Virus record (IMG/VR): IMGVR_UViG_3300033995_001164
Coordinates: 245,178-309,177 of that record
Reading direction: 5' to 3' (one strand)
DNA: 64,000 nucleotides
A program made the translations under genes and the position numbers. The notes beneath the pieces were generated by a model. The model did not search any database. It was not told where the DNA came from and saw only the letters and a list, made by a program, of their open reading frames with translations. Shown one piece after another: positions 46,128-63,272 of the stretch. Numbering within the stretch: the stretch's first letter is position 1; each line of letters begins with the position of its first letter.

Positions 46128-46177
46128 ATACTACTTTTTTACAAAGATATAACAAAGATTCCACATAACCAAAAAAA

Positions 46178-46240
46178 GGGTTGGGATTCCATCGAACGAA
46201 GTGAGTGACCGGACGAAGTGAGTGACCGGACGAAGTGAGA
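46178..46240 (-). repeat. dispersed intergenic element, copy 1 of 5, with an internal 17-bp tandem repeat
   Basis: GGGATTCCATCGAACGAAGTGAG core; other copies at 48545-48585, 49996-50030, 50579-50620, 51362-51402. Confidence 0.9.
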
Positions 46241-46648
46241 CTACTCCCGCCCCCACCCATAATGAACCACCTCCCCATCAATATATTCCTTCCAAGTTTT
46301 ATTCCATGGACCGGAAAACAATACGGTCATACATCCGTTACTATTAGAAATCCGGTGATATGAATCCCGGGGAAAATAAACCAAGACTTTCTCCCTACGA
46401 ACAATACGATATTCTCCACTAACCTCATCATCCAAGATTTGTTCATCATACTCACCAAACAGTTTCACAGACCACGCATTAAAAGCGTGGGTATGAAACC
46501 GGTCCTGACTACCAAGAGATTTATGAAAATAAAAAAAGATGATGGAGAATAACCACTTACACTCAAAGACCACGAATTGACTAACGACCTGTTCCCCGAA
46601 CTCGAACTTATTGTATTTTAGAAATGAAATTGTTTTTGTTTTTACCAT
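46241..46648 (-). CDS. cupin-like protein
   Basis: RFHTHAFNAWS..GEYDE..YHRI. Confidence 0.6.
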   Translation of the reverse strand: MVKTKTISFLKYNKFEFGEQVVSQFVVFECKWLFSIIFFYFHKSLGSQDRFHTHAFNAWSVKLFGEYDEQILDDEVSGEYRIVRREKVLVYFPRDSYHRISNSNGCMTVLFSGPWNKTWKEYIDGEVVHYGWGRE

Positions 46649-46773
46649 AATGAATATACCTTATGGAATAAAAGTATAATTCTAATTTATGGTTATGTCA
46701 AATAAAAAACCCCAAATCTAATTAAAGAAATGGGGTATGTTTAAAAACATATTGGTAACATTTTTTTTTTGTG

Positions 46774-47058
46774 TTTAAATTGTAATGATTCCCAACTTGC
46801 TCCCCTGTTAGAGTTAAAATGTTATGTTGTGACTATCTTTCAAATTGTGATGATTCCCAACTTTGAATTTCGTTGAGGCTAACTTACAGCGGTTGCGACT
46901 ACCTTTCAAATTGTGATGATTCCCAACTCAAAATGTTATTCAATTGGGGATTTTATGTTGTAACTACCTTTCAAATTGTGATGATTCCCAACCCTATTAA
47001 CGAGGTTTATATCGGTGTCCTCGTTGTGACTACCTTTAAAATCGAGACACATCCCAAT
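46774..47058 (-). CRISPR. CRISPR array associated with the TnpB/Cas12-like gene
   Basis: Consensus (+) GTTGTGACTACCTTTCAAATTGTGATGATTCCCAAC at 46826-46861, 46892-46927, 46957-46992; half-degenerate copies at 47023-47058 and 46774-46796; spacers 29, 30, 29 and 30 nt. Confidence 0.92.
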
Positions 47059-47255
47059 AATGGCTTTTCAAATGAAATTGTGATAGTCTATCCGTTCTCG
47101 GATAATGAGGTTTTGAGACCCCTAGCCGCCTAACCGTTCCGGCAATCACACGTTGACCGTGTTCTTTTACCCGGGTTATATCTGCATACAGTGTTTTAAC
47201 CTTTTAACGTGTTACACACACGCGAGTTACCAATATGTTTAAGAACTTTTTTATT
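47059..47255 (-). ncRNA. putative omegaRNA/tracrRNA-like scaffold
   Basis: Non-coding and GC-richer; hairpin 47089-47104; 47141-47150 reads UGUGAUUGCC on minus and can pair with repeat GGUAGUCACA. Confidence 0.7.
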
Positions 47256-47261
47256 ATGATA

Positions 47262-47269
47262 CAAAGATA
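47262..47269 (-). promoter_or_regulatory. TATCTTTG box driving the scaffold and array
   Basis: 5 nt after the nuclease stop codon, pointing into the non-coding region. Confidence 0.7.
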
Positions 47270-47274
47270 AGTAA

Positions 47275-48477
47275 TTATTCTCTAACTAACAAACTTTCTC
47301 TGATATTTTTTGCTGCGTTTATATCTCTATCGTGGTGTTCCTCACAAGACTTACAGGTCCATTCCCTTTGGGATAACTTTAACTCAGTATTTATATCCCC
47401 ACAGTTAGAACAAGTCTTACTTGTATTACGGGGGTCAATCCTATTAAATTCAATTCCTTTTGAATTACAAACACTTCCCAAATAATCGACAAATGAACGA
47501 ATCCCGATTCTTGCAGTGGATTTAGCCATATGTTTATTCTGTAACATAAATGACAAACGAATATCCTCAACTTGTATTTTAGAAAACTTACCTTTAGTTA
47601 AAACACCAACAACATATCTGTGATATTCTTTTCTAATATTATTTAATTCATTCTGTAATCTACCCTTCTTCTCAATTACTCTCCAATAATTTTTGGATTT
47701 AGGTTTACCCTTGTTTAATCTGTTCTTACGAGATATACTCTTTTGAATAATTGAAATCTTATCTTCCAATTTTTTAATCCTCTCAATTGGTACCTGATAT
47801 TTAAGTCCTTCGGATGTAATTGCCATATCTTTAATACCTACATCAATTCCCAATGATTTACCCGAACTATTAATCTTAACAATTTCAGTATCCTTTAAAT
47901 CCAATGTTAAAGATAAATACCAATTACCATCAGACTTCCTATGGATTGACATTAACTTTGGTGTAGACCCTTTGAATTGTTTATGAAACTTACATTTTAT
48001 AATTGGATTTATCCCAACTTTTTTAAGTAAAGTAGGAGCAAACCTAATTTCATTATTATCCCAATCCAAACTTAAACTTCCACGACTAATACTATTTGAA
48101 TTAGTCGTTAATTTCAATATATTCGTTTTTTTCTTATACGAAGGTTTTCTTGATTTTGGTTTTTTTCTGAAATTTTTAATTGATGTGACCAAAGATTCAG
48201 AAACATATTCCCTAAATATTGATGGAACATTATCAAACCAATTAATCGTTGAAAGATAATTAGAGAAAAGAGATTTACTCTTTAAGTTCGGAGCAGGAAA
48301 GTCCTTAAAATCTTTCCCATCAATAAATTCACTAACCAAAAGATTATATCCCCCTCTTAATTTATTACCAATATCAAATAACCATCTCTTTTGTTTATCA
48401 TCCGGGTATATCCTATACTCAACTGATACTCCAACATAAGATGGACCCTTTTTTCTTTCAACCAAAAAATGATTCAT
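47275..48477 (-). CDS. tnpB: TnpB/Cas12f-like RNA-guided nuclease, 400 aa
   Basis: YRIYP N-terminus, RuvC-I GIDVG, RuvC-II VED, zinc finger CSNC/CKSC, RuvC-III DRDINAAKNI; start 48477 follows TATATTTG at 48497-48504. Confidence 0.93.
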   Translation of the reverse strand: MNHFLVERKKGPSYVGVSVEYRIYPDDKQKRWLFDIGNKLRGGYNLLVSEFIDGKDFKDFPAPNLKSKSLFSNYLSTINWFDNVPSIFREYVSESLVTSIKNFRKKPKSRKPSYKKKTNILKLTTNSNSISRGSLSLDWDNNEIRFAPTLLKKVGINPIIKCKFHKQFKGSTPKLMSIHRKSDGNWYLSLTLDLKDTEIVKINSSGKSLGIDVGIKDMAITSEGLKYQVPIERIKKLEDKISIIQKSISRKNRLNKGKPKSKNYWRVIEKKGRLQNELNNIRKEYHRYVVGVLTKGKFSKIQVEDIRLSFMLQNKHMAKSTARIGIRSFVDYLGSVCNSKGIEFNRIDPRNTSKTCSNCGDINTELKLSQREWTCKSCEEHHDRDINAAKNIRESLLVRE

Positions 48478-48598
48478 ATATAATTTATTTAGAAAGCAAA
48501 TATAAAACAAAGAATTCAAATCACCAAATATATAATGAAAAAAAGGAATGGGATTCCCTCGAACGAAGTGAGAAACCGGACGAAGAGCACTATACGAA

Positions 48599-49929
48599 TT
48601 ACTCATCAGCAGGGATATTATTTAACCAATTATTAAAATATTGTGAAGTATCCACATGATTTAATCCAAATAGTTTTCTTATACTATTGTATAACTCAGA
48701 CTTCATAGATATTTTACTAACACTATGTGGTCTCGAACCAACCTTAACTCCATTCACAATATAATAATAACTAAACATCTTAAACGCCCTCTCAAAATGG
48801 TTACTCTCTTTCGATACCGATAAGGTGGGGTTATCACCAACAATAGAATTAAGATATTCATGAACCAATTTTTCCATTATGTTGTTTCATTAATATCGGA
48901 CATCACATAACCTTCAGGTGGAAAATGAACCAAACATCTTCCACTCTCTTTATAACAAGTACAATCCAATTCATCATCAATCTCAAATGAAGCACTGCTC
49001 ACCTTATCTTCGTAATTTGTGAAGAAATCATTAAAGATTCCCGTAATGGTCATTTTCTTTTTCACCTTACTTATTTTTTGAATAGTGAAACCCTTTGAGG
49101 GTCTATTGTTATCACAATGTTATTACTTGAATCCGCATACGAAGCAATGTCATCATCCAATAACATTTTATGGATATTATCATCATAATAAATCACCACA
49201 TCATTGTATGAGTAATGTGGGTAATGATTTTTGATTGGTTCCAATAGAACAACATCAGTACATTGACTAATGGCACCGTCCATAATGGATTTAATTAGTT
49301 CATAATAATATTGATTTCGGTTTTTCTTATACTCGTTCAATATATCAATTCGAGATAAGGGTTCAGTTGTTTTTGGTTTGGAGTTCCACATCATTTTTTA
49401 CTATTTCTATTAATTTTTTAAGACATTACATATTAAAGCTAACAATGGTAATGATAAGAGTAATAATGAAATTACTAACCCCCAATAATCTTTTATTTTT
49501 TGCATATTTCTATTAATTTTTTAAGTTTTGCTTCTTAACAATTTCTATCAACTTGACCAAACATTCAAGTTCTGCTTCTTCGTAAGTTTGAAAAAAAGTA
49601 TCCCATATTAATCCGCCTATTCTAAAATCACTATTATATTCAGTGATATTATCTTGGATATACCAACAATAAGGTTGTTGATATTTGTTTTCTTTAGTAA
49701 TCCAACTATCTAAATTATACTTCTCTCTAAACCATCTAAATGCTTGTTGGTAAAGTGGTGCTACAAATGTTGTTTTAGATTCTAATCTAAATTGAAAAGG
49801 AGCAGATATAGTTTCATTTGATATATAAACCTCTCTATCTTTACCTACATAATATCCTAAACAAGGTTCATCAAATCCTAATTCTTTTAAAGCTAATGCT
49901 TGTTCGTAAGGTATAAATTCTTTTTCCAT
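48599..49929 (-). CDS. four hypothetical proteins (48599-48877, 48877-49065, 49071-49394, 49513-49929)
   Basis: ORF track; 49513 has LKELGFDEPC..APLYQQAFRWFREKY..YEEAE. Confidence 0.6.
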
Positions 49930-50081
49930 AATTTTTTATTTAGAAAGCAAAGATATAATAAATTTTTTATTCCACCAAATATATAATAAAAAAAAGGGTT
50001 GGGATTCCATCGAACGAAGTGAGTCCGAACTGGGAGAGACCATAATTTGTTAATCCCAAAATTATTCCATATATTTAACCC

Positions 50082-50564
50082 ATGAATTTATATGAACAAT
50101 ACGAGAACTCGAAAACGGAGGGGATAGATGATAAAATTAAAACTATCACTAACCTTATAACCGAATATCCAAAAATCACGGATTACCTTTATAATAGAAT
50201 TGACACTTGTTTCGGGAAACACATCGTATATGTTGTTCATATGAAAGTGGATGGTATAGACATGATTAAAATTGGTTATACCAAAAACTCAGTAACCGGA
50301 AGATTCTCAGAAAAAAGATGGACCGACCACCATAAGATAGAAATAATCGAAGTTCTAAGAGGAAACACATTACAAGCAAAAGGAGCGGTGGATTTCGAAA
50401 AACAACTTAAATCAGTATGTTCAATCTTTACAATAGAGTCCAACCTAAAACTCCCGGGAAAAAATGAATTTATGAATATCAAGAATCTTAATGAGATACT
50501 AATCCAATACGATACCTTATTCCCAAAATATCAAAACATCATAGGTCTTAAATCACCTAATTAG
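50082..50564 (+). CDS. GIY-YIG/T5orf172-like nuclease domain protein
   Basis: VYVV..IKIGYTK..R..E...GKNEF. Confidence 0.6.
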   Translation: MNLYEQYENSKTEGIDDKIKTITNLITEYPKITDYLYNRIDTCFGKHIVYVVHMKVDGIDMIKIGYTKNSVTGRFSEKRWTDHHKIEIIEVLRGNTLQAKGAVDFEKQLKSVCSIFTIESNLKLPGKNEFMNIKNLNEILIQYDTLFPKYQNIIGLKSPN

Positions 50565-50738
50565 ATTCTAAAAAAAAAGGGGATGGGATTCCATCGAACG
50601 AAGTGAGTCCGGACTGGAAGGTATACGAATATCCCCTCCAATTAAAATATTAATCAAATCACCTTCAGTAAGTCTAACAATATTCCCCATATTAAATTTA
50701 TTTATTATAAATACTCAACAATTAGGGTATTTATTAAT

Positions 50739-51050
50739 ATGGAAATAATATTAACAGAGATTCAATATAAAAAATTACTATCAAATAAACCTCCAATAGA
50801 TTTATTACGAAGATTTGATTTAATAAAATCAACAATACCAAAAGTTATTAAGTATTATGATGTTGATGAATACAATAGAGAGGATTTTATTGATGAGGTT
50901 CTTCATCAACTATACGACGAAATTGATTATTATGGTATCGACAATTTTTTTGATTATGTTAAACCATTATTCTATGATGATATTGGGAACATATATGATA
51001 GGAAAGTGGGTTATAGATTAAAAAGAAGAAAACAAAAAACCCCACCTTAA
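50739..51050 (+). CDS. LTE-leader small protein
   Basis: MEIILTEIQY after a GTATTTAT box. Confidence 0.6.
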   Translation: MEIILTEIQYKKLLSNKPPIDLLRRFDLIKSTIPKVIKYYDVDEYNREDFIDEVLHQLYDEIDYYGIDNFFDYVKPLFYDDIGNIYDRKVGYRLKRRKQKTPP

Positions 51051-51061
51051 GGGTGGGGGTC

Positions 51062-51334
51062 TTATTCTATTCCGTCAATTCTTATATCAGGAAATTTCTC
51101 CCTTAAATAAGAAAGTAATAATTCATCAGTAAGTTCCCCAAACATTTGATTCAAAGTATACTCCGTTGAATAATCAACATAGTCAAATTGATAATATAAT
51201 ATCATAAACCCAAATATATCCCCGTTCTTATCCACAAACTCCCGAGGTGAACTATCATATGTTAAATCATATTGGGAGTCCATATAATTATTAAACATTC
51301 TTTCTAATCTACTTTCACTTATAACATATCTCAT
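51062..51334 (-). CDS. ISE-leader small protein
   Basis: MRYVISESRL. Confidence 0.6.
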   Translation of the reverse strand: MRYVISESRLERMFNNYMDSQYDLTYDSSPREFVDKNGDIFGFMILYYQFDYVDYSTEYTLNQMFGELTDELLLSYLREKFPDIRIDGIE

Positions 51335-51431
51335 ATTGATAAATACTTGACTATCAAAAAAGGGCTGGGATTCCATCGAACGAAGTGAGTCCGGACTGGA
51401 AGGTATATGAATAACCCCGCCCATTATAATA

Positions 51432-52052
51432 TTAATCAAATCGAATTATTCGATATTCATTAGTGTTAGGATAGAATTCCACATTCTCATCATATTGTTC
51501 CTGAGTCAATTCCCGACACTTATCCAATATGTCCTTTATCCCACCATTACAGATGGTATATCCTTTCTGTATATATTTCTGAACTCTTCTCAAAGAATCA
51601 AAGACAAATAATGGTTCAAGATGATTTATAATAATCCTCTTATGGTAAACATCCAATAAACCGGAGGGGTTACATATAACCTTCTCCCCATCAAACATAA
51701 ACTGACATACCGTAAAATCAAATGAATCAATAATATCCGTTAATTTATCATATTCCCTATATATAATCTGAACCTTAATCTTACCCTTTCTATAAGTCCT
51801 CAAGTTCTCATTGAAATAAACCAATTTATAACCATTACCCTTAGATAGATTCAACTTAACAAATAAATCCAAATCCTCTTTAGTTAATCCAAAGATGTCT
51901 ATATCACTATACTCATCCCCAAATAAACTATCCCGGACGGCTCCACCGGCAATTACAACATTCATCCTGTCCTTTTTCTCATCATCCCTAATAAAATTGA
52001 AATTAGGTAATTTAGTTAATAAAGAATCTTTCGGTAATTCACAATACTCCAT
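51432..52052 (-). CDS. nucleotidyltransferase (CCA-adding/poly(A) polymerase head-like)
   Basis: IAGGAVRD..SDIDIF, FDFTVCQ. Confidence 0.8.
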   Translation of the reverse strand: MEYCELPKDSLLTKLPNFNFIRDDEKKDRMNVVIAGGAVRDSLFGDEYSDIDIFGLTKEDLDLFVKLNLSKGNGYKLVYFNENLRTYRKGKIKVQIIYREYDKLTDIIDSFDFTVCQFMFDGEKVICNPSGLLDVYHKRIIINHLEPLFVFDSLRRVQKYIQKGYTICNGGIKDILDKCRELTQEQYDENVEFYPNTNEYRIIRFD

Positions 52053-52524
52053 AAGTTATTTTTCTACAAAGATATAACATTTCCTAATTCCTCACAAATT
52101 TTCCAAAAATTTTTTTTATCGTTGAAGGGACATTTAAAAAAGAAGGGGTCGTGTTTACGGAACGATAGTGTAGTACGTGTTCCCCCGTCAATACCCCACC
52201 CATTAGGTAGGGTTAAGATAAGTTCTAATTTCCGGACAGAGTTATTCCCCCATTAAAGGGTGGGGGATTTATTCCCCCGACCATCTAACCGGAGGGGTAA
52301 ATTTTTCCCCAAAAATTATTTTATTTGATTTAGGGGATTATCCCCCCTATATGACATTCTGACAGTATAGTAAGGGGGGATACCGCAGGGAGGGGGGGTG
52401 TACCCCGCCCCACGAGGGAGTATGGACCCCACCCATAAGTTATTAACATGACACCTCCCCTCCTTGTTAATAAAAAACCCCCACCATTCATAACAGTATG
52501 TTATGGTGATGTGAGGGTTATATG

Positions 52525-52977
52525 TTAGTAAGTATCTTCTTCAATGTCTTCATCCGGTTCAGGTTCCGGGACAGTCAAACCTTTTACAGTAAAAAAACTT
52601 CCTACCGTGAATCTTGCTTCAGGCATTCTCATCTCGGGTGGAATGGCGGGGGACTGTTGTACATCTTCAATGGTTGTGTTAACATCATTCTTTAGTTCCC
52701 TCATATCTTCAGTTGACCCCACAAAGAATAATGATAAGGACGTGGACTCATATTGTTCCCCTTGTTCTACTGACCTATCAATCCACCGGGCCACATCCCA
52801 CTCCTGTTCTTTCCCCAACTCATATGGGTCAATGAATATGTCCAAGAAGATAACATAAGTAAAGTTCTCTAATCTTGGGACATCTAATTGGACATCCTTT
52901 ATCCATGGGTACTCTCTCATTAGTACCTTCCTAACTATCTTGTAGGTATAATTGTTTTCTACTTCTTCCTGTGTCAT
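52525..52977 (-). CDS. hypothetical protein, paralogue of 39578 (EYP.I family)
   Basis: LMREYPWIKDV; ATATTTAT box upstream. Confidence 0.65.
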   Translation of the reverse strand: MTQEEVENNYTYKIVRKVLMREYPWIKDVQLDVPRLENFTYVIFLDIFIDPYELGKEQEWDVARWIDRSVEQGEQYESTSLSLFFVGSTEDMRELKNDVNTTIEDVQQSPAIPPEMRMPEARFTVGSFFTVKGLTVPEPEPDEDIEEDTY

Positions 52978-53069
52978 GATAATAAATATATAATCTTATG
53001 TTAAATACGTCAGAGAATATTTTTAATATTCCGTTTGGCGGGGTTATTATAATGTTGTATCTTTGTACC

Positions 53070-53382
53070 ACTGAATCGGTAATCAACCCGACAGGGGGCG
53101 CAACAAGGGTTGGGGAGAGTGGACGGAGCAGCGCTCATACTTGACCTTTAGGTTAAGTTATATTTTTATATAAACCCCGCCCATTTGGTGATGACCGGAA
53201 ACAAAAAATTCCCACACGTAATGGACACGACAGAGAAGATTTTTAATCTTCCATTTGGTCCGGGTGTCGTAGACCGACACGCTAGTGGAGTAGGATAATG
53301 AATAGTTATATGTGGTTGTCTATAATTCCAAACTTTACGTCCCTAAGGTACTGAGTGGTTAATCCCCTACTGTGGGGGACAA
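53070..53382 (+). ncRNA. candidate ~310-nt structured RNA
   Basis: TATCTTTG at 53058-53065; no ORF; several perfect hairpins; terminal TCCCC..GGGGA stem. Confidence 0.45.
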
Positions 53383-53519
53383 TCATATTCCATTATAAAT
53401 ATAGTTGATTATATGTAAAATCAAATATTAATCATTATCTTTGTGGTTAATTAAATAATCATATGAGAACATTACTAAAATTCTTATTCCTTGGGTGGTT
53501 AGTCACCATAATATATAAC

Positions 53520-53786
53520 CTATTTACCGGTGGGGACAAACGAAGATATTAGTTCCTGACACTTGTTTAAGATGTCGAGTGAGGAATAATCCCCTCCCAT
53601 CTCATATAGTCCTTCTATCTTGGCGTCCACACACGCCCAAGAGTTCATGCTTATTGGTTTCCTATTAAACCCCGCCTTTACCTTCTCGAAGTATAGAACC
53701 CCTTTCTGATTCACATTGTTGTCTGAGATGACCACTCGAATCACCTTCTCATCTATATAATCTATGTTGAATATTAAATCTTCCAT
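53520..53786 (-). CDS. hypothetical protein
   Basis: ORF track. Confidence 0.5.
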   Translation of the reverse strand: MEDLIFNIDYIDEKVIRVVISDNNVNQKGVLYFEKVKAGFNRKPISMNSWACVDAKIEGLYEMGGDYSSLDILNKCQELISSFVPTGK

Positions 53787-54772
53787 TGTTTTCTTGTCCG
53801 GATAATACCGTATACAGTTAAATATAGTTATGGAACATATAAAAATAAAGTTATTAACAGGCGGGGAATGGTCCTGACGCTATGTCAGTTGATAAAAAAA
53901 AGTGTAGTTGTTGATAAGTTTGGGGGTAAATTATTAGGATTTGTCAAAATGTCAGTCGAGGTTTCGATAAGGGATAATCCCTTTCCCCGCCTTTGAGGTG
54001 TTAACAAGTGGGTAGTCCTCCCACATTTTACCACCATATCCTGTGTGGTTATAGTGTAAAGACCACTTTTTCCCCTCTCACGACCCCTACAGGACCAGTT
54101 TTTTACTATATATAAAACCTGGCAAAAACAGTAGTGAGTAGTACAAGAGGCGGGGAGTTCCCTTTAGGGAACCTATAATAGGACATTTATAACCTCAACG
54201 AGGGAACCGATACCCCTTAGTGAACCATTCTACGCCCCTGTCGGTAGACCGACCAAAGGGAGTTCGAAGGAAGACAAGTCGTAGGTGGTTATGTAATAAC
54301 CCCGACCATCGGGAGGTGGTAAGTCGTTAAAAGTTACTATTCATATCACTCATGTGAGTTTTAAACTGACTACACTGATACAAAACATAACTTATTATAC
54401 GGTTATGGATGGATTATACCTTAAGGGGTGTAATTGTTTACCGAAGGTATTGTCTTATACCCTAATAGGTATAATCCCCTCATTAACTACTAATACCACC
54501 TCATCATTGTCTTGTCGTTAGGTGGGGACAATACATTCAGGCGGGGAATTGTATATATTGTGAGTAAAACAATTATTATCGGGTTATTGGTAGTAATAAG
54601 GTTATGGACCGATAATGATTATAAGAAATAGTGAAGAATGAAACTATGAGTGAATCCGGAGTGGAGAGAGAACTGACCGACAGGGAAGTGGAACGGAACA
54701 TAGGTATGAACGAATGGTTTTAGTCTTTAGTATTTCTTTGTTATGTAAATCTTTATTATTATCTTTGTGATT

Positions 54773-55825
54773 ATGAATAAACCCACCCATCCTGAAATTA
54801 TTGAGAAAGTATTGCTTCGTCTTATTAGAACGGAGTATCCTTCCGTGGAGGGAACAAGGATTGTTCATATATTTGGTAAGGGCTACAGTAAATATCATGT
54901 TTATGTTGGGGTGAGTTATACGGATGTTATTAGAAATAATTACTCTGAGTTTATACCATATGTTAATAACTTAGGTAAATACATTTTACCTCATCCGGAT
55001 ATTATTAAAGTCGTGGGATTTTATACTATATCTGAGTAATCTATTATATGGTCCGGGGCGTTAATCCCCAACCCCTTATATTTATTTAGTATGAAATATA
55101 TTATACCCGAAGAAAAACTTAAGAAACTAATTAAGTCATACATTATGTCTCGTTACAATTCAGTTAGTAAGGTTTACTTTACAAAAAGAAATGTTCATAC
55201 ACCGAGTTTTTTTGAAGGTAATCCCGTTCGAAACATTACTTTAACAATTATTAATATTGAGTTTAATTCCGGTGAGATGGTTCACGGTTATTTAAGTGCA
55301 TCACCATCCCGAACTTTAAGAACAATTCAAAACGATATTAATTCCATGTTTAATCTTGGTATTGGTGACGGCCCCTATTCTTTATGGGATGTTGATGGAA
55401 CTGTGGTTCATTAATCTATTATATGGTCCGAGGCGTTAATCCCCAACCCCTTATATTTATTTAGTATGAAATACATTATAACAGAAAACCAATTAGATAG
55501 ATTCATTAGTAAATGGTTATCCAAGGAATATGCAGATTTGGAAATTTATGACCACGATAATCAACTTTGGTGTTTATATGTTGATAAAGATGGTGAGGTA
55601 ATATTTCTTTATCATACCAAAGACAATGAGTTGTATGTCTCAAAGGATGTTATGAAATTTTTAATCGATATGTTTTCCATTGATGTCGAACAGACTAAGG
55701 ACATACTTAGAGAATGGTTTGAAAAGTACACCGGTTTGAATTCTTATAAGGTTTTATCTTGGGATTTTTTTGATGCGGATTGGAAAAAAATTGTTAGATG
55801 GGAAACAAAAAAACGATTATCTTAA
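54773..55825 (+). CDS. three small genes (54773-55039, 55091-55414, 55466-55825); last two with MKYII leaders
   Basis: ORF track and promoter boxes. Confidence 0.65.
55037..55098 (+). repeat. 62-bp promoter module duplicated at 55412-55473; related copy at 59697-59725
   Basis: TAATCTATTATATGGTCCGRGGCGTTAATCCCCAACCCCTTATATTTATTTAGTATGAAATA, one mismatch between copies. Confidence 0.9.
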
Positions 55826-55864
55826 ATTAAAAACCCCCACCGTTAAGTGAGGATTTTCTTTTTG

Positions 55865-57486
55865 TTACAAACAATCTTTACAATATTTCCATTCTATAAC
55901 TCTCTCACCATCCTCAAAAGTTTTACTACCATTATATGAACACCATTTGTCGTCAGCATAATAAACAACCTCATACCATTCAGAAACACCTAAATCATTT
56001 ATATGAGTTATTTTAGCCAAAACAGAATCTAATTCAGTAGGTGTTTCTTGTTTCCCAACGTGAGTAATTGTAATACCTCTTTCAAGCTCTTGTTTAGGTT
56101 CTTCTTTTGGAATGATGATTTTGTATATCCAAGTGTGATATATGGTTTTATAACTATCAATCTTAACCATCTCACAACTTGGATTTTTAACAAACCATTC
56201 TAAAAACTCATTATCAATAGCTTGTACACCATCATTGATTAATTCTTGGTCTGTTGTTAGGATGATTTTTTTGGCACCATTAAATTTTGTAAAAATTTTA
56301 TCAGTTTCTTGTTTATAAACAACATTATGTTTATCAATACACCAATCTCCATATTTAATATCTTCATCAGAAGTGATGTAGATGTGTTGTCTATTAGATA
56401 AATTATAAATATCAGAACAAAATGTTAGTTCTTCTTTTGATGTAGATTTTGATAACCTACTTGGTTTATCTGTTGGTATTACGTGTATGTTTTTCATAAC
56501 TTTATTTTCTTTTTAAATTGTTCAAACCATTTTTTCAAAGTTACAAATGTCATAATACTTTTTTCATCTTCTTTGATATATTCCATTGCATTTTGATTGA
56601 AATTTTGTAGTAATTCTAATACTTCTTCCTCACTATAACTTCTTTTTTCAAGTTCAGAAATATATCTCAATACACTGATTGGAACTTTCATATAATCTTC
56701 TTCGGCATTAGCTCTGTAATATGTTAAATCTTTAGTTTCTTCAAAATCTTCCAAATTCCATTTAGAAGTGTTAATTACAAATTCTCTTTTAACTCCAATA
56801 CCTTTTTTTAAAGATTTATTTAAGAAATCAACTTCTGTTAATTGTTGCATATCCTTAAAAGGTTTAGGTTCTTGTTTAGGTTTCACTAACTTGTTTGCAG
56901 TTTCTCTTACTTTTTGTTTAATAGATTCAGGTGTTTCATAAAGGATTCTATCTTTAGTTGATTGTTTAGGTTTACCAACTACCATATCTATTTTACCTTT
57001 AGGTATTCCTCTTAATTCCTTTTTATGTTCGCATTTATCACAACCATAGAAGGCACCACAACATTTCCATTCTTCTTTTGGAATGATGATTTTGTAATCA
57101 TATAATTCTGAAGTAAAATGTTTGTATTCTTTTTCAATTTCAACCTCCTCACAATTTGGATTCTTAACAAACCATTCTAAAAAATCATTTGGAATAGGTT
57201 GTACACCATCTTTAATAAGGTCTTGGTCTGTTGTAAGAATGATTGAAAAATAATTAGTATATACAGGAGTTCTCATTTTCATAAATTCTCTGTATTTGTA
57301 AACTTTACCTTCCCAAAAAACATAACCTTCTTCTTTAATTTCTTCATCAGAAGTGATGTAGATGTTTACATTATTTCCTAATGCTTCTTTGATAGGTTTT
57401 ATATCGTGACATCTTGTTAGATTACCTAATTTAGTCATCCAAAACCTACTTGGTTTATCTGTTGGTATTAAGTGTATGTTTTTCAT
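55865..57486 (-). CDS. two tandem mosaic paralogues (55865-56497, 56494-57486)
   Basis: Shared blocks MKNIHxIPTDKPSR, IYITSDE, IILTTDQ..DGVQ..FLEWFVKNP, YKIIIPKEE. Confidence 0.75.
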
Positions 57487-57589
57487 AACCTTATTTTTTT
57501 TACAAAGATACAATTATTTTTCACCCCACCAAACAATTAATAACTTTTTTATAATTAAAAACCCCCACCGTTAAGTGAGGGTTGTTATA

Positions 57590-58153
57590 TTAATAGAATG
57601 TTTTTAATTTCATGTATGGTTCCAAATTATATTTGTCTATAATCTGCTTGAAGATTTGTTGTCTGTTTCTTAAACCCAATATGTTTTTTTTACTAATAAA
57701 TCCATAACCGAATCCTGAATCACCACTTAACCCCACAACTTTATAATATGTTTGGTCATGAAGGTTTGTCGGATATAATCTTGCTGTAAACTTGTAAATC
57801 ATATTGTCTTTTGACCCGAATCTAAAATCCCCTAATTCTTTTTCATCACGATGTAGTGGTCGTGAATTATTGTTTAGTCCAAGTTTTTCAACCAACGCGT
57901 CATGTATATATAACGCCATTTTGTCTGTCGACATATAAACAAGTGGTGTGTGAGTATCCTCACTAAACCCCATAATATCACCATCATAAAGAACCTTTAT
58001 TAAATTATCAATCCCGCCCATTAGTTTGGATGTAACCGCCATCCCTGATTGTTTTAACATGGATTTTAGCGCATCTTTTTTTAATTCGGACTGTTCGTTA
58101 ATAACCCCGCCCATTATCTCGTGTATCCTATGTATGTTCTCTTGTAAGTTCAT
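57590..58153 (-). CDS. 'LQENIHRI' leader protein
   Basis: MNLQENIHRIHEIMGGVINE. Confidence 0.65.
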   Translation of the reverse strand: MNLQENIHRIHEIMGGVINEQSELKKDALKSMLKQSGMAVTSKLMGGIDNLIKVLYDGDIMGFSEDTHTPLVYMSTDKMALYIHDALVEKLGLNNNSRPLHRDEKELGDFRFGSKDNMIYKFTARLYPTNLHDQTYYKVVGLSGDSGFGYGFISKKNILGLRNRQQIFKQIIDKYNLEPYMKLKTFY

Positions 58154-58159
58154 ATTATC

Positions 58160-58247
58160 TTAATTTGTAATGTTCCTCCACCTAATTAAAACGGTATAAA
58201 ATCCATAGTTTGTTTCCGTTACCCTTAAATTATAATGTTCCTCTATC
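58160..58247 (-). CRISPR. single-spacer CRISPR-like unit at a gene 3' end
   Basis: 36-bp repeat 58212-58247, 29-nt spacer 58183-58211, partial repeat 58160-58182 matching the 29.7-kb repeat. Confidence 0.65.
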
Positions 58248-59515
58248 CATTCCTTTGTTAGGTCCCGAATTTGTTTCCATTCCATACCAAACATTGATTG
58301 TAAATATGACCAAATCTCATCATAACTAACATAAACCTCCCCATTTTTTTTATTGTAGTCAAAAACTACTTCATCACCTTTTCTATAATAAATAAAATTG
58401 CGATGTTTTTTAGTTTCAAATGGTATTAAATCACCATACTTATCGTTTAACCATTTCTTGGCAATGTTATTTAATTTACTTTCGTTAATAACCCCCATCA
58501 TCGATTGGATTCTATGTATATTCTCTTGTAAACCCGGTTGTTTTAAATGATTGAATTTAAACTCTATCTTCGCCCCTTTTGGGTCTTGTGGTGTCCATCT
58601 AAATCTCTTACCGATATAATCTTTTAATTCACCCCTCATTTTGATTTTGATTGCGTCTTCCACCTTGGTTGGATTAAGATTAGGGATTTCCCCCTTTAAG
58701 TAGTTCTGTGGTGTATATACCTGTGTGTTGTTTTCTCTTTTAAATACATCATACACATCTATATTAACAATGGCGTTATCATCACCCACCTCTATATTCC
58801 TTACTTTGAACTTTATGTTTGTGTTTGGAACCATTTGTTCCGGGTCTTGATTCCAATAATTGTATGTCTTGGCTGTCTTCTTTCTCTTTGTTAAATCAGG
58901 TTCGATTGTTTTTAATTTCTTTACCTTATTCTTCATTATATCATCATGACTATATCCCCGCTCCAATAGTTTCATCTCATCAGGAGTTAATGTATATACA
59001 CTATCGAATGTATCATCACCCCATCCCACAGGATTGGCATTACTTATTTGTCTACTTGTGGATGAAGAATAATTTTTTGTTACCTCATACCATTTATCAT
59101 CTTTGAATATGTAAATAGGGTACCACCCGTATGATACAACTTTATAGTATGGAGTTCCTTTTGGGTCTTCGGACCAATATCCCTCTAAATTTGAACCTCT
59201 GAATGGTAATTGAGCTATTGTGTATAGTTTCGCCTTTGGATTTGATATAACCTTCCCACTTTGTTTTCTTGGGTCAACAAAGTTTTCCTTCGTTAAGTTT
59301 GAGTAGTCCCCATCTTTTCTAAAGTTTAATACATACAACTCCAAAATATATTGCTCGAATCCTTTAGGTATTCCCATATATGGCGCAAAATTCTTGATGG
59401 CTTCTAATAAAGATGCTCTTGTTCTATTCTTTTTCTTCTCCACATCTAACAACTTGAATAATTTGGAAATTACTCTTAGTGATGGCTCATTGGATTGTTC
59501 TGCTAATCTTATCAT
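58160..59515 (-). CDS. fusion protein ending in a 29759-like domain with one repeat-spacer unit
   Basis: Internal LQENIHRIQSMMGVINES; C-terminus WIEEHYNLRVTET-NYGFYTVLI-RWRNITN*. Confidence 0.75.
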   Translation of the reverse strand: MIRLAEQSNEPSLRVISKLFKLLDVEKKKNRTRASLLEAIKNFAPYMGIPKGFEQYILELYVLNFRKDGDYSNLTKENFVDPRKQSGKVISNPKAKLYTIAQLPFRGSNLEGYWSEDPKGTPYYKVVSYGWYPIYIFKDDKWYEVTKNYSSSTSRQISNANPVGWGDDTFDSVYTLTPDEMKLLERGYSHDDIMKNKVKKLKTIEPDLTKRKKTAKTYNYWNQDPEQMVPNTNIKFKVRNIEVGDDNAIVNIDVYDVFKRENNTQVYTPQNYLKGEIPNLNPTKVEDAIKIKMRGELKDYIGKRFRWTPQDPKGAKIEFKFNHLKQPGLQENIHRIQSMMGVINESKLNNIAKKWLNDKYGDLIPFETKKHRNFIYYRKGDEVVFDYNKKNGEVYVSYDEIWSYLQSMFGMEWKQIRDLTKEWIEEHYNLRVTETNYGFYTVLIRWRNITN

Positions 59516-59777
59516 TATTGATAAATATATGGTCAATAGAAAACCTCCTCGTCGATAATAAGGTTCCGGACTTATATTGTGGGTTTATAAGTCTCAGGAC
59601 TTATATGGTTTTTATCATATAATGAGGAATATATGTCTTTTATCATATATTACACATTTTGGTAATATTATGAAGAACACTTATTATAATCTATCATATG
59701 GTCCGGGGCGTCAATCCCCTACCCCTTTTTTTGTTTATTCATTTCTTTTTTATATCTTTGCCGACAAATATAATACT

Positions 59778-62696: not shown

Positions 62697-63207
62697 ATTT
62701 AAAAGAACAATTTTTGATAAATTAACCGATGACCTATCTCATGTGGAATTGATTTTCTACAATGACTCCCTTTGGTTTATTAACCGAGAAAAGAAGTATT
62801 GGTATTTGGAATTAGAAAAATCAGGTAAATTATATTGGAGATGGCAATTCTTTACTAATTTTTTCTCTCCATTCACAATGGAACGAAATGAATATGAACC
62901 ACTTATAAAAGAATGGGTAGAGTCAGCATTAAATTGCGGGGTTACAACAACAGTAAACAAGGATTCAATCGCCGGATGGACGGTAGAGTCAGCATTAAAT
63001 TGCGGGGTCACAACAACTCAAATAGGCACCATCAAAAAACTGAAATGGGTAGAGTCAGCATTAAATTGTGGGGTGACAACAACGTTGTTGATGAAATTCC
63101 ACCAAAAACTATTGGTAGAGTCAGCATTAAATTGTGGGGTGACAACAACAGTACCATCTAAGTTATCCGTTGCAATAAAGGTGGAGTCAGTATTAAATGG
63201 ATTATAA
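62683..63207 (+). CDS. protein with a translated repeat-spacer tail
   Basis: Four units of VESALNCGVTTT plus 10 variable residues. Confidence 0.85.
   Translation: MITDKFKRTIFDKLTDDLSHVELIFYNDSLWFINREKKYWYLELEKSGKLYWRWQFFTNFFSPFTMERNEYEPLIKEWVESALNCGVTTTVNKDSIAGWTVESALNCGVTTTQIGTIKKLKWVESALNCGVTTTLLMKFHQKLLVESALNCGVTTTVPSKLSVAIKVESVLNGL
62916..63200 (+). CRISPR. in-frame CRISPR-like array
   Basis: GGTAGAGTCAGCATTAAATTGYGGGGTBACAACAAC at 62916, 62982, 63048, 63114 and a partial at 63180; four unique 30-nt spacers. Confidence 0.85.
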
Positions 63208-63272
63208 TCTCTTATTTATCCCGAGGAGTTATATCCCCACCCCTTATAAACCGAATGAAAATTTAGATACAG

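What the first reader, a model, noticed from the sequence alone, without database searches (positions are those of the whole stretch)
46178..59725. Mirror-oriented GTCCGG...AATCCC(C)AACCC elements on both sides of the non-coding centre
Seen: five left-arm copies (46178, 48545, 49996, 50579, 51362) read, on the minus strand, approximately GTCCGGACTCACTTCGTTCGATGGAATCCCAACCC-T-run. Right-arm copies (55048, 55423, 59697, decayed 63220) read GTCCGGGGCGTTAATCCCCAACCCC on the plus strand. All point away from 52-54.7 kb, most sit just upstream of a promoter box, and I saw none in the first 46 kb. Inference: polar protein-binding sites tied to origin or terminus function (early transcription, DNA entry or replication).
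Basis: partly seen in the sequence, partly recalled or inferred. Interest (0 to 1): 0.6.

Follow-up and report, generated by a model that had tools for sequence, protein, structure and literature searches.

The report
Gene-cassette boundary repeats in a jumbo phage
The mirrored GC-rich repeats are real, phage-specific intergenic modules of about 70 bases that sit between the end of one small gene and the promoter of the next in a T4-like jumbo phage, and they mark the points where single genes are swapped between related phages; nothing ties them to a replication origin or terminus.

Summary
The window is the last 64 kb of a 309-kb T4-like jumbo phage from lake water. It carries five "left-type" modules, all on the minus strand, and four "right-type" copies on the plus strand. 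One more right-type copy lies on the minus strand at 52257-52298. None occurs elsewhere in the genome.

Every copy points the same way as its flanking genes. The mirror image therefore reflects divergent transcription away from a conserved centre.

I collected about 150 distinct left-type copies from related viral and freshwater contigs. All are intergenic. Each has an invariant 13-nt core, a C-rich block and a run of 6-8 T, followed by a host-type promoter or a TATTTAT box.

They are not canonical hairpin terminators. The C-block is no more base-paired than in shuffled controls.

The strongest signal is mosaicism. Across a module, the neighbouring gene is conserved in 1-5% of orthologous comparisons, against 29-59% at junctions without a module. 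Homology switches inside the module, and orthologous sites exist both with and without it.

The best reading is a PeSL-like regulatory and recombination cassette boundary, a new variant of a known kind. What recognises the invariant core is unknown. The origin/terminus interpretation is not supported.

The parts
46171..46239 (-). Left-type module L1: T-run 46171-46177, C-block 46178-46185, core CTCACTTCGTTCG 46193-46205, plus two extra 17-nt tandem core-like units up to 46239
   Evidence: One 17-nt unit is missing in contigs of 2 of 4 lake runs.
48538..48602 (-). Left-type module L2 (core 48560-48572, T-run 48538-48544), between a 92-aa ORF and the TnpB/CRISPR cassette
49988..50053 (-). Left-type module L3 (core 50011-50023, T-run 49988-49995)
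50570..50637 (-). Left-type module L4 (core 50595-50607, T-run 50570-50578). It is the only window copy that a simple terminator scan calls.
51356..51419 (-). Left-type module L5 (core 51377-51389, T-run 51356-51361), 12 nt after the stop of the nucleotidyltransferase-like gene. It is followed by TATTTAT at 51339-51345 and ATG at 51334.
52257..52298 (-). Right-type copy on the minus strand, at the left edge of the centre, upstream of the first leftward promoter
55034..55075 (+). Right-type module R1. Its first bases TAA are the stop of the upstream gene. TATTTAT at 55079-55085, ATG at 55091.
55409..55450 (+). Right-type module R2. TATTTAT at 55454-55460, ATG at 55466.
59684..59725 (+). Right-type module R3, followed by a T-run and the host-type promoter at 59730-59760
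63206..63243 (+). Decayed right-type copy R4
46142..46173 (-). Host-type promoter (TTTG-N-TATCTTTG) whose -33 TTTG is the end of the T-run of L1
48497..48528 (-). Host-type promoter after L2 (drives the TnpB-like gene)
49948..49979 (-). Host-type promoter after L3
59730..59760 (+). Host-type promoter after R3
52053..54772 (.). Conserved, largely non-coding centre from which the two arms are transcribed outwards (promoters 52067-52098 minus, 54737-54767 plus). It is conserved in many related contigs.

Best explanation
The elements are composite intergenic boundary modules of about 70 nt. They lie in the variable (hyperplastic) early region of a T4-like jumbo phage that most likely infects Bacteroidota.

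Each module sits after the stop codon, or after the true hairpin terminator, of one small accessory gene and immediately before the promoter of the next. It has a CCG-rich 5' half, an invariant 13-nt core (CTCACTTCGTTCG) that can form a tiny hairpin, a C-rich block and a T6-8 tract. In a subset the T tract supplies the -33 TTTG of a host-type promoter. Otherwise it lies 10-12 nt before a TATTTAT box.

The modules are co-oriented with transcription, and the two arms are transcribed away from a conserved centre. That is why they look mirror-oriented.

Shown: they are the shared patches of homology at which single-gene cassettes are gained, lost and exchanged among related phages.

Inferred: the exchange happens by homologous recombination between copies, as for the PeSL cassettes of T4-type phages.

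Inferred: they also have a transcriptional role, insulating or controlling each cassette. The strict conservation of the core suggests a sequence-specific factor acting on DNA or RNA. They are not ordinary hairpin terminators.
For: 1. Distribution and specificity. The modules are confined to one region and are polar. There are 5 left and 4+1 right copies in 309 kb, with the same clustering in four related records. They are phage-specific: 14 viral and 98 metagenome stretches carry them. The 185,579-species prokaryote genome collection gives only chance-level hits, 8 against roughly 4 expected, none in Bacteroidota.

2. Position. Copies are always intergenic and co-oriented with the flanking ORFs.

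3. Promoter context. The Bacteroidota-type composite promoter is enriched three-fold genome-wide (61 against 20 in the control) and follows L1, L2, L3 and R3. Of 143 family copies, 100 have TATTTAT downstream. In 90 of 97 of these the T-run ends 10-12 nt before it.

4. Mosaic boundaries. I compared pairs of loci sharing a gene at 60-97% amino-acid identity. The neighbour across a module is conserved in 1/66 and 3/61 comparisons. At junctions without a module the figures are 29-59%, including when the controls are restricted to gaps of at least 100 nt.

5. Breakpoint location. Ends of homology blocks are four-fold enriched within 60 nt of a module. Identity profiles switch from 'shared' to background inside positions -30 to +40 of the module.

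6. Filled and empty sites. Orthologous gene pairs occur both with and without the module.

7. Lineage and precedent. The phage has a Gp23-type capsid gene at 206.8 bits. PeSL cassettes with the same logic are documented in T4-type phages (PMC2839356, PMC4122927).

8. No dedicated recombinase. No tyrosine recombinase, serine recombinase or Y1 transposase is detectable in the genome. That favours general recombination.
Against: - The defining stem-loop of PeSLs is missing in most copies. RNAalifold finds no consensus fold. The C-block pairs strongly with upstream sequence in only 27-37% of copies, with no own-versus-other specificity (p = 0.77). Its pairing probability is 0.40 against 0.44 for shuffled controls.
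- The conserved part is not itself a recognisable promoter.
- There are no expression data, because all the sequencing runs found are DNA. Any transcriptional role is therefore inferred.
- The adjacency statistics come from contigs that were selected for carrying the element, from heuristic ORF calls, and from non-independent pairs. They are descriptive, not formal P-values.
- A RecA/UvsX-type recombinase was not detected with PF00154. This is not conclusive, because UvsX is divergent.
- Such strict conservation of 13 nt is more than passive recombination patches need.
Confidence: 0.6

Rival explanations
1. The modules are sites of a dedicated cassette-exchange or miniature mobile-element system, comparable to integron attC sites, MITEs/PATEs or REP elements. 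An unidentified phage enzyme recognises the invariant core (perhaps as a small DNA hairpin) and inserts or excises the module or whole cassettes.
For: - The module is a clean present-or-absent polymorphism between orthologous genes and carries its own T-run.
- The core is invariant and shows one compensatory pair, A:T (139 copies) to C:G (17 copies), with a single intermediate. The variable positions lie in the 3-nt loop. One variant has a perfect 7-bp hairpin in the same register.
- On the opposite strand the loop reads C-GAA-G. From my own knowledge, not tested here, this is the core of a very stable DNA mini-hairpin.
- Cassette arrays lie next to a conserved platform-like centre.
Against: - No tyrosine recombinase, serine recombinase or Y1 transposase is detectable.
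- The helix shows no extension by covariation.
- There are no target-site duplications or inverted terminal repeats. An empty site without any T-run shows that the flanking T-runs are not duplications.
- The two conserved proteins of the centre give no family or look-alike hits.
Confidence: 0.15
2. The modules are purely transcriptional signals: factor-dependent terminators or rut-like sites, antitermination sites of the nut/put kind, or binding sites of a phage activator for the downstream TATTTAT promoters. The mosaicism is only a by-product of their being conserved patches.
For: - They are strictly co-oriented with transcription.
- The T-run is at a fixed distance from TATTTAT.
- The sense strand is C-rich and unstructured.
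- The phage encodes its own sigma-70-family protein.
- Own-genome sites carry true hairpin terminators in exactly the same slot before T-run-N10-12-TATTTAT.
Against: - Empty orthologous sites keep the TATTTAT box without the module, so the module is not required for that box.
- Spacing to host-type promoters is variable.
- Many copies sit directly after a complete hairpin terminator, so little transcription would reach them.
- There are no RNA data.
Confidence: 0.15
3. One reading: polar protein-binding sites that serve a replication origin or terminus, or DNA entry, centred on 52-54.7 kb.
For: - The arrangement around a conserved, GC-richer, largely non-coding centre is mirrored, and it recurs in related phages.
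Against: - Polarity equals gene direction in every case.
- Copy number and position vary freely between close relatives.
- The two arms carry different families.
- GC skew tracks the coding strand, with no switch at the centre.
- The centre contains promoters and at least one candidate small-RNA gene rather than iterons.
Confidence: 0.04
4. They are ordinary rho-independent terminators that happen to be similar.
For: - They lie in the 3' UTR and a T-run follows.
- About a third of copies can close a long stem between an upstream G-run and the C-block.
- L4 is called by the simple scan.
Against: - Pairing of the C-block is no better than in shuffled controls.
- There is no covariation with the copy's own upstream sequence.
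- There is no consensus fold.
- Many copies follow a genuine terminator.
- Two right-type copies have no T-run.
Confidence: 0.06

Closest known systems
PeSL (promoter-early stem-loop) mobile regulatory cassettes of T4-type phages (Arbiol et al. 2010, PMC2839356; Comeau et al. 2014, PMC4122927)
   Same: - Both are repeated composite intergenic motifs in hyperplastic regions of T4-type genomes.
- Both lie between the stop of one small orphan gene and the start of the next, are GC-rich with an AT/T-rich tract, and are associated with an early host-type promoter.
- Both are the points where genes are inserted, deleted or replaced between related phages.
   Different: - There is no sequence relation to PeSLs.
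- In PeSLs the conserved part is the sigma-70 promoter plus a polyG/polyC stem-loop. Here it is a non-palindromic core of about 35 nt that is neither.
- The host promoter type is TTTG/TAnnTTTG, and most copies precede a TATTTAT box instead.
- Terminator activity and mini-circle formation are untested here.
Integron attC sites and cassette arrays
   Same: Both involve single-gene cassettes, all in one orientation, each bounded by a conserved repeat and lying next to a conserved platform.
   Different: - No integrase is present.
- There is no imperfect-palindrome hairpin.
- Each cassette has its own promoter.
- The system sits in a lytic T4-like phage.
Lambda nutL/nutR and HK022 putL/putR
   Same: Both are polar elements in mirror orientation on the two transcripts that leave a central control region.
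   Different: - Those occur once per operon, downstream of pL and pR. These recur at every cassette boundary, often behind a terminator.
- No boxB-like helix is supported beyond 2 base pairs, and no N-like factor was identified.
REP/BIME elements and IS200/IS605-derived PATEs
   Same: Both are short, conserved, extragenic repeats in 3' UTRs.
   Different: - These are not palindromic.
- The genome has no RAYT or Y1 transposase.
- They are absent from prokaryote genomes.

Membership tests
PeSL cassettes of T4-type phages | Carried by a T4-type myovirus | tested here: met
   Gp23 (PF07068) scores 206.8 bits at genome 197.0-198.8 kb.
PeSL cassettes of T4-type phages | Repeated intergenic motif between the stop of one small gene and the start of the next, concentrated in a variable region | tested here: met
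PeSL cassettes of T4-type phages | The conserved motif contains a host-consensus early promoter | tested here: inconclusive
   The host-type TTTG-N-TAnnTTTG follows 4 of 9 window copies and 25 of 143 family copies. The T-run can supply the -33 element. However, the conserved core is not a promoter, and 100 of 143 copies precede TATTTAT.
PeSL cassettes of T4-type phages | Stable polyG/polyC stem-loop acting as terminator or attenuator | tested here: not met
   There is no consensus fold. Pairing of the C-block equals the shuffled control. There is no own-versus-other specificity. Only 1 of 5 window copies is called by a terminator scan.
PeSL cassettes of T4-type phages | Sites of insertion, deletion or replacement of genes between related phages | tested here: met
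PeSL cassettes of T4-type phages | Recombination between copies gives cassette mini-circles | not testable with these tools
   This needs inverse PCR on phage DNA.
Intrinsic (rho-independent) terminator | GC-rich hairpin ending within about 2 nt of a U-tract | tested here: not met
   The U-tract is present in all left-type copies. The hairpin is absent in most.
Integron attC / cassette array | Folded imperfect inverted repeat plus an adjacent IntI tyrosine recombinase | tested here: not met
   No fold is found. PF00589 is absent from the genome, and the control genomes all gave hits.
REP/RAYT or IS200/IS605 ends (PATE) | Palindromic hairpin ends and a Y1 transposase | tested here: not met
   PF01797 is absent. 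The only IS605-related gene is a single TnpB, which is itself a cassette with a CRISPR array.
nut/put-type antitermination sites | Structured RNA element in the nascent early transcript, recognised by N or by RNA polymerase | tested here: inconclusive
   Only a 2-bp mini-hairpin with one compensatory pair is supported. No RNA data are available.
   Orientation equals gene direction in all copies. There is no skew switch at the centre. Copies vary freely among relatives.

The most novel reading that the evidence does not exclude
The invariant core, with its mini-hairpin, is the recognition site of an as yet unidentified phage factor that actively drives cassette exchange. That would be an integron-like gene-capture system in lytic T4-like jumbo phages. 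The conserved non-coding-rich centre would act as its platform, and it would be able to pick up cargo such as the TnpB-CRISPR cassette found between two modules here.
Probability: 0.15. Interest if true: 0.8.

Novelty: new variant of a known kind. Interest (0 to 1): 0.5.

Why it matters
PeSL-type cassettes are the only documented mechanism for how large lytic phages keep shuffling their orphan genes, and they have been described only in T4-type phages of Proteobacteria. This finding shows the same genome logic, with an unrelated and unusually strictly conserved module, in an uncultivated freshwater jumbo-phage lineage that uses Bacteroidota-type promoters.

About 150 natural copies are in hand, so breakpoints can be mapped statistically. 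The core gives a simple sequence tag for finding the variable regions of this phage group in metagenomes. It also marks the boundaries of their cargo genes, including a miniature TnpB-CRISPR system. In addition it poses a concrete question: what recognises a 13-nt invariant core that is neither a promoter nor a terminator hairpin?

Tried and rejected
- Rfam, at gathering and at permissive thresholds: no family.
- tRNA or tmRNA: none. The hits in prokaryote genomes are not tRNAs.
- Megablast against the phage collection: no match.
- Long outer-stem terminator model: suggested by the five window copies but rejected on 143 copies.
- Consensus RNA fold: none. An extended helix around the one covarying pair is not supported.
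- T7-like promoter idea (shared GACTCACT): no single-subunit RNA polymerase was found. The control genomes were also silent, so this is uninformative. Spacing to GGG differs. Dropped.
- Multisubunit phage RNA polymerase: none.
- Pairing of the centre's candidate small RNA with the C-block: no own-versus-other difference, and only about 1 sd better than shuffled.
- IS200/IS605 end hypothesis: there is a single TnpB and no TnpA. The TnpB gene uses the same module-plus-promoter as its neighbours.
- Look-alike searches for the two conserved centre proteins: nothing usable.
- CRISPR spacer targets: none found in IMG/VR by exact 22-mers or in the held loci.
- RNA evidence: all 24 sequencing runs found are DNA. 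The laid contigs only show that assemblies break at the repeats, plus a 17-nt unit indel.
- RecA/UvsX by PF00154: not detected; inconclusive.
- The 326-kb metagenome contig behind L085 could not be searched whole because it is not held.
Full report
**Context.** The window is the last 64 kb (245178-309177) of a 309,177-bp IMG/VR virus record with about 30% G+C. The record encodes a Gp23-type major capsid protein (206.8 bits), so it is a T4-like jumbo phage. Near-identical DNA is present in 24 lake-water metagenome runs, and none of them is RNA. The composite Bacteroidota-type promoter TTTG-N18-21-TAnnTTTG occurs 61 times, against 20 in a reversed-sequence control. TATCTTTG occurs 63 times against 20. 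The host is therefore probably a member of the Bacteroidota; this is an inference. The phage has a sigma-70-family gene of its own. It has no detectable RNA polymerase beta subunit.

**The observation.**
- The left motif TCACTTCGTTCGAnGGAATCCC occurs exactly five times in the whole genome, always on the minus strand, and each copy is followed by 6-9 T.
- The right motif AATCTATyATATGGTCCGrGGCGTyAATCCCCnACCCC occurs three times on the plus strand, with a decayed fourth copy. I found one further copy on the minus strand at 52257-52298.
- Chance expectation for the combined pattern is zero.
- A profile of the left type finds only the five left copies significantly. It touches the right-type copies only over the shared 3' block. 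The two arms therefore carry two families that share GTCCGG and AATCCC(C)A(A/G)CCC(C).
- Every copy is co-oriented with its flanking ORFs.
- In four related phage records the left-type copies are again clustered in 2-5 kb and all lie on one strand.
- In L011 and L024 the left type lies on one side of the homologous centre and the right type on the other.

**A large family.** Exact-pattern scans found the left-type core in 14 viral and 98 metagenome stretches, mostly freshwater. In one genome from each of 185,579 prokaryote species there were only 8 hits. That is about the number expected by chance for 19 fixed bases in 596 Gb, and the hits fall in unrelated taxa and unrelated contexts. The element is therefore phage-specific.

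After removing duplicates I had 143-158 distinct copies. They are always intergenic and co-oriented with both neighbours. The module is built as follows:
- Upstream there is often a true hairpin terminator, or a G-run followed by a T-rich stretch.
- The 5' half reads (T)ATTCGTATACCGCGTCGTCCGGA.
- The core is CTCACTTCGTTCG.
- The 3' part reads nnGnAAnCCC(C)A(G/A/T)CCC(C), followed by T6-8.

Even in pairs of copies that share neither neighbouring gene, similarity extends from about -30 to +40 relative to the core. The module is thus about 70 nt long.

**What lies downstream.**
- Of the 143 copies, 100 have TATTTAT. In 90 of 97 the T-run ends 10-12 nt before it (sd 1.07). In 58 of 97 an ATG follows 4-5 nt after it.
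- Twenty-five copies have a TAnnTTTG box. In the common arrangement the final TTTG of the T-run is the -33 element with a spacer of about 20 nt.
- In the window, L1, L2, L3 and R3 are followed by host-type promoters. L5, R1 and R2 are followed by TATTTAT.
- The genome also has T-run-N10-13-TATTTAT-ATG sites where an ordinary hairpin terminator occupies the slot of the module.

**Not a hairpin terminator, not a known RNA.** The five window copies suggested a long outer stem with apparent covariation (GGGUU/AACCC, GGGGAU/AUCCCC, GGGC/GCCC). That idea did not survive the larger sample.
- Only 27-37% of the 143 copies pair the C-block strongly with upstream sequence. A copy's own upstream sequence pairs no better than another copy's (permutation p = 0.77).
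- The pairing probability of the last 8 nt before the T-run is 0.40, against 0.44 after shuffling the upstream part.
- RNAalifold finds essentially no consensus structure.
- A simple terminator scan calls only L4.
- Rfam has no match.

Inside the core there is one clean compensatory pair: A3:T9 in 139 copies, C3:G9 in 17, and one intermediate. The rare variable positions fall in the 3-nt loop. One divergent copy has a perfect 7-bp hairpin in the same register. The helix is not supported beyond that. A tiny hairpin, in RNA or in single-stranded DNA, is therefore plausible but weakly supported. The strict conservation of the primary sequence points to a sequence-specific factor; this is an inference.

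**Cassette boundaries.** This is the strongest result. I called ORFs on all the loci and clustered the proteins, giving 765 proteins in 325 families. I then classified 527 same-strand gene junctions by whether a module lies in the gap; 121 of them carry one.

| Comparison (pairs of loci sharing a gene at 60-97% aa identity) | Junctions with a module | Junctions without a module |
|---|---|---|
| Upstream gene shared: is the downstream neighbour conserved? | 1/66 | 37-40% |
| Downstream gene shared: is the upstream neighbour conserved? | 3/61 | 29-59% |

The ranges for junctions without a module cover controls with any non-overlapping gap and controls restricted to gaps of at least 60 or 100 nt. 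Further support:
- Ends of nucleotide homology blocks lie within 60 nt of a module in 24.7% of cases, against 5.9% for random positions.
- Pairs sharing only the upstream gene are similar up to the core and fall to background by +40. Pairs sharing only the downstream gene rise from background at about -40.
- Orthologous gene pairs occur with and without the module. The inserted segment is the element with its own T-run and about 10 nt, placed between the stop or terminator and the TATTTAT box.
- The 121 junctions involve 59 upstream and 66 downstream gene families.

Caveats: the contigs were selected for carrying the element, the ORF calling is heuristic, and the pairs are not independent.

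**Mechanism.** The genome has no tyrosine recombinase, serine recombinase or Y1 transposase. The simplest mechanism is therefore homologous recombination between modules during replication or co-infection. This was shown experimentally for the PeSL cassettes of T4-type phages, which combine an early promoter with a GC-rich stem-loop and flank orphan genes (PMC2839356, PMC4122927). The modules here work like PeSLs in position and in evolutionary effect. They fail one defining feature, the stem-loop, and they are unrelated in sequence. I therefore class them as a new variant of that kind, not as members. Whether they terminate, insulate or activate transcription is unknown.

The polarity and the link to early transcription are supported. 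A role in origin, terminus or DNA-entry function is not.
- Orientation always equals gene direction.
- Copy number varies among close relatives.
- GC skew follows the coding strand.
- The centre holds divergent promoters and conserved non-coding blocks. One of these is a candidate small-RNA gene with a promoter and, in this genome, a terminator-like hairpin.

**Population data.** Contigs of four lake runs end at the modules, as expected for repeats. In two of the four runs a contig lacks one 17-nt tandem unit of L1. Joints near 49.4-49.9 kb reflect a highly abundant gene family and cannot be assigned to this phage.

**Side finding.** One cassette lies between L2 and the 135-aa gene before L1. 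It encodes a 419-aa TnpB-family protein (NF040570, 184.8 bits; its nearest solved relatives are TnpB proteins). Behind that gene come a promoter, a GC-rich stretch of about 200 nt and a CRISPR array of five 36-nt repeats with four spacers. A related phage (L009) lacks this 1.83-kb segment at the same module.

Noticed in passing
window 46761-48534 (minus strand): A miniature type V-like CRISPR system sits inside one cassette. It comprises a 419-aa TnpB-family/Cas12f-like gene (47275-48534), a host-type promoter at 47262-47293, a GC-rich tracr/omega-like stretch of about 200 nt, and five 36-nt repeats (GTTGGGAATCATCACAATTTGAAAGGTAGTCACAAC; the first and last are degenerate) with four spacers of 29-30 nt at 46761-47058. 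The related phage L009 lacks the whole 1.83-kb segment. No protospacers were found.
   Followed up: partly
window 53034-53165 (plus strand): Candidate small-RNA gene in the centre. A host-type promoter at 53034-53065 is followed by a GC-rich body of about 95 nt. The promoter and body are conserved in 11 related contigs. In this genome the body is followed by a terminator-like hairpin at 53139-53158, but that 3' end differs in the relatives. Two of the 20 predicted base pairs show compensatory changes. There is no Rfam match.
   Followed up: partly
window 52291-52484, 53787-54230, 54316-54399, 54563-54754: Further non-coding blocks of the centre are conserved at 78-97% identity in many related contigs, and they are GC-richer than the genome. 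They are probably structured RNAs or regulatory DNA. I did not analyse them.
   Followed up: no
family-wide; in the window 51332-51361, 55076-55093, 55451-55468: The arrangement T-run, 10-12 nt, TATTTAT, 4-5 nt, ATG is tightly spaced. It could be a phage-specific promoter class giving nearly leaderless mRNAs, or a translation signal. The own genome has 8 such sites against 2 in a control. The gp23 homologue instead has a T4-late-like ATAAATA upstream.
   Followed up: partly
genome 55126-55332 (outside the window), locus L131: A phage-encoded sigma-70-family protein (Sigma70_r2, 64.4 bits, in a 266-aa open frame). No RNA polymerase beta subunit was found.
   Followed up: no
window 46196-46239: L1 carries three tandem 17-nt core-like units (TCACTCACTTCGTCCGG). 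Contigs from two of four lake runs lack one unit, so the copy number is polymorphic in the population.
   Followed up: partly
window 55091-55414, 55466-55825; genome 280.9 and 282.0 kb; many related loci: A family of small paralogous proteins starting MKYII(T/P)E... is the commonest cargo downstream of modules. They have no Pfam or NCBIfam hit.
   Followed up: no
window 46673-46701 (minus strand): A near-consensus E. coli-type promoter (TTGACA-17-TATACT, 11 of 12 matches) lies upstream of the 135-aa cysteine-dioxygenase-like gene and is conserved in L009 and L101. This is odd in a genome that otherwise uses TTTG/TAnnTTTG boxes. Sigma-70-like matches as a whole are not enriched (63 found against 80.6 in shuffles).
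   Followed up: no
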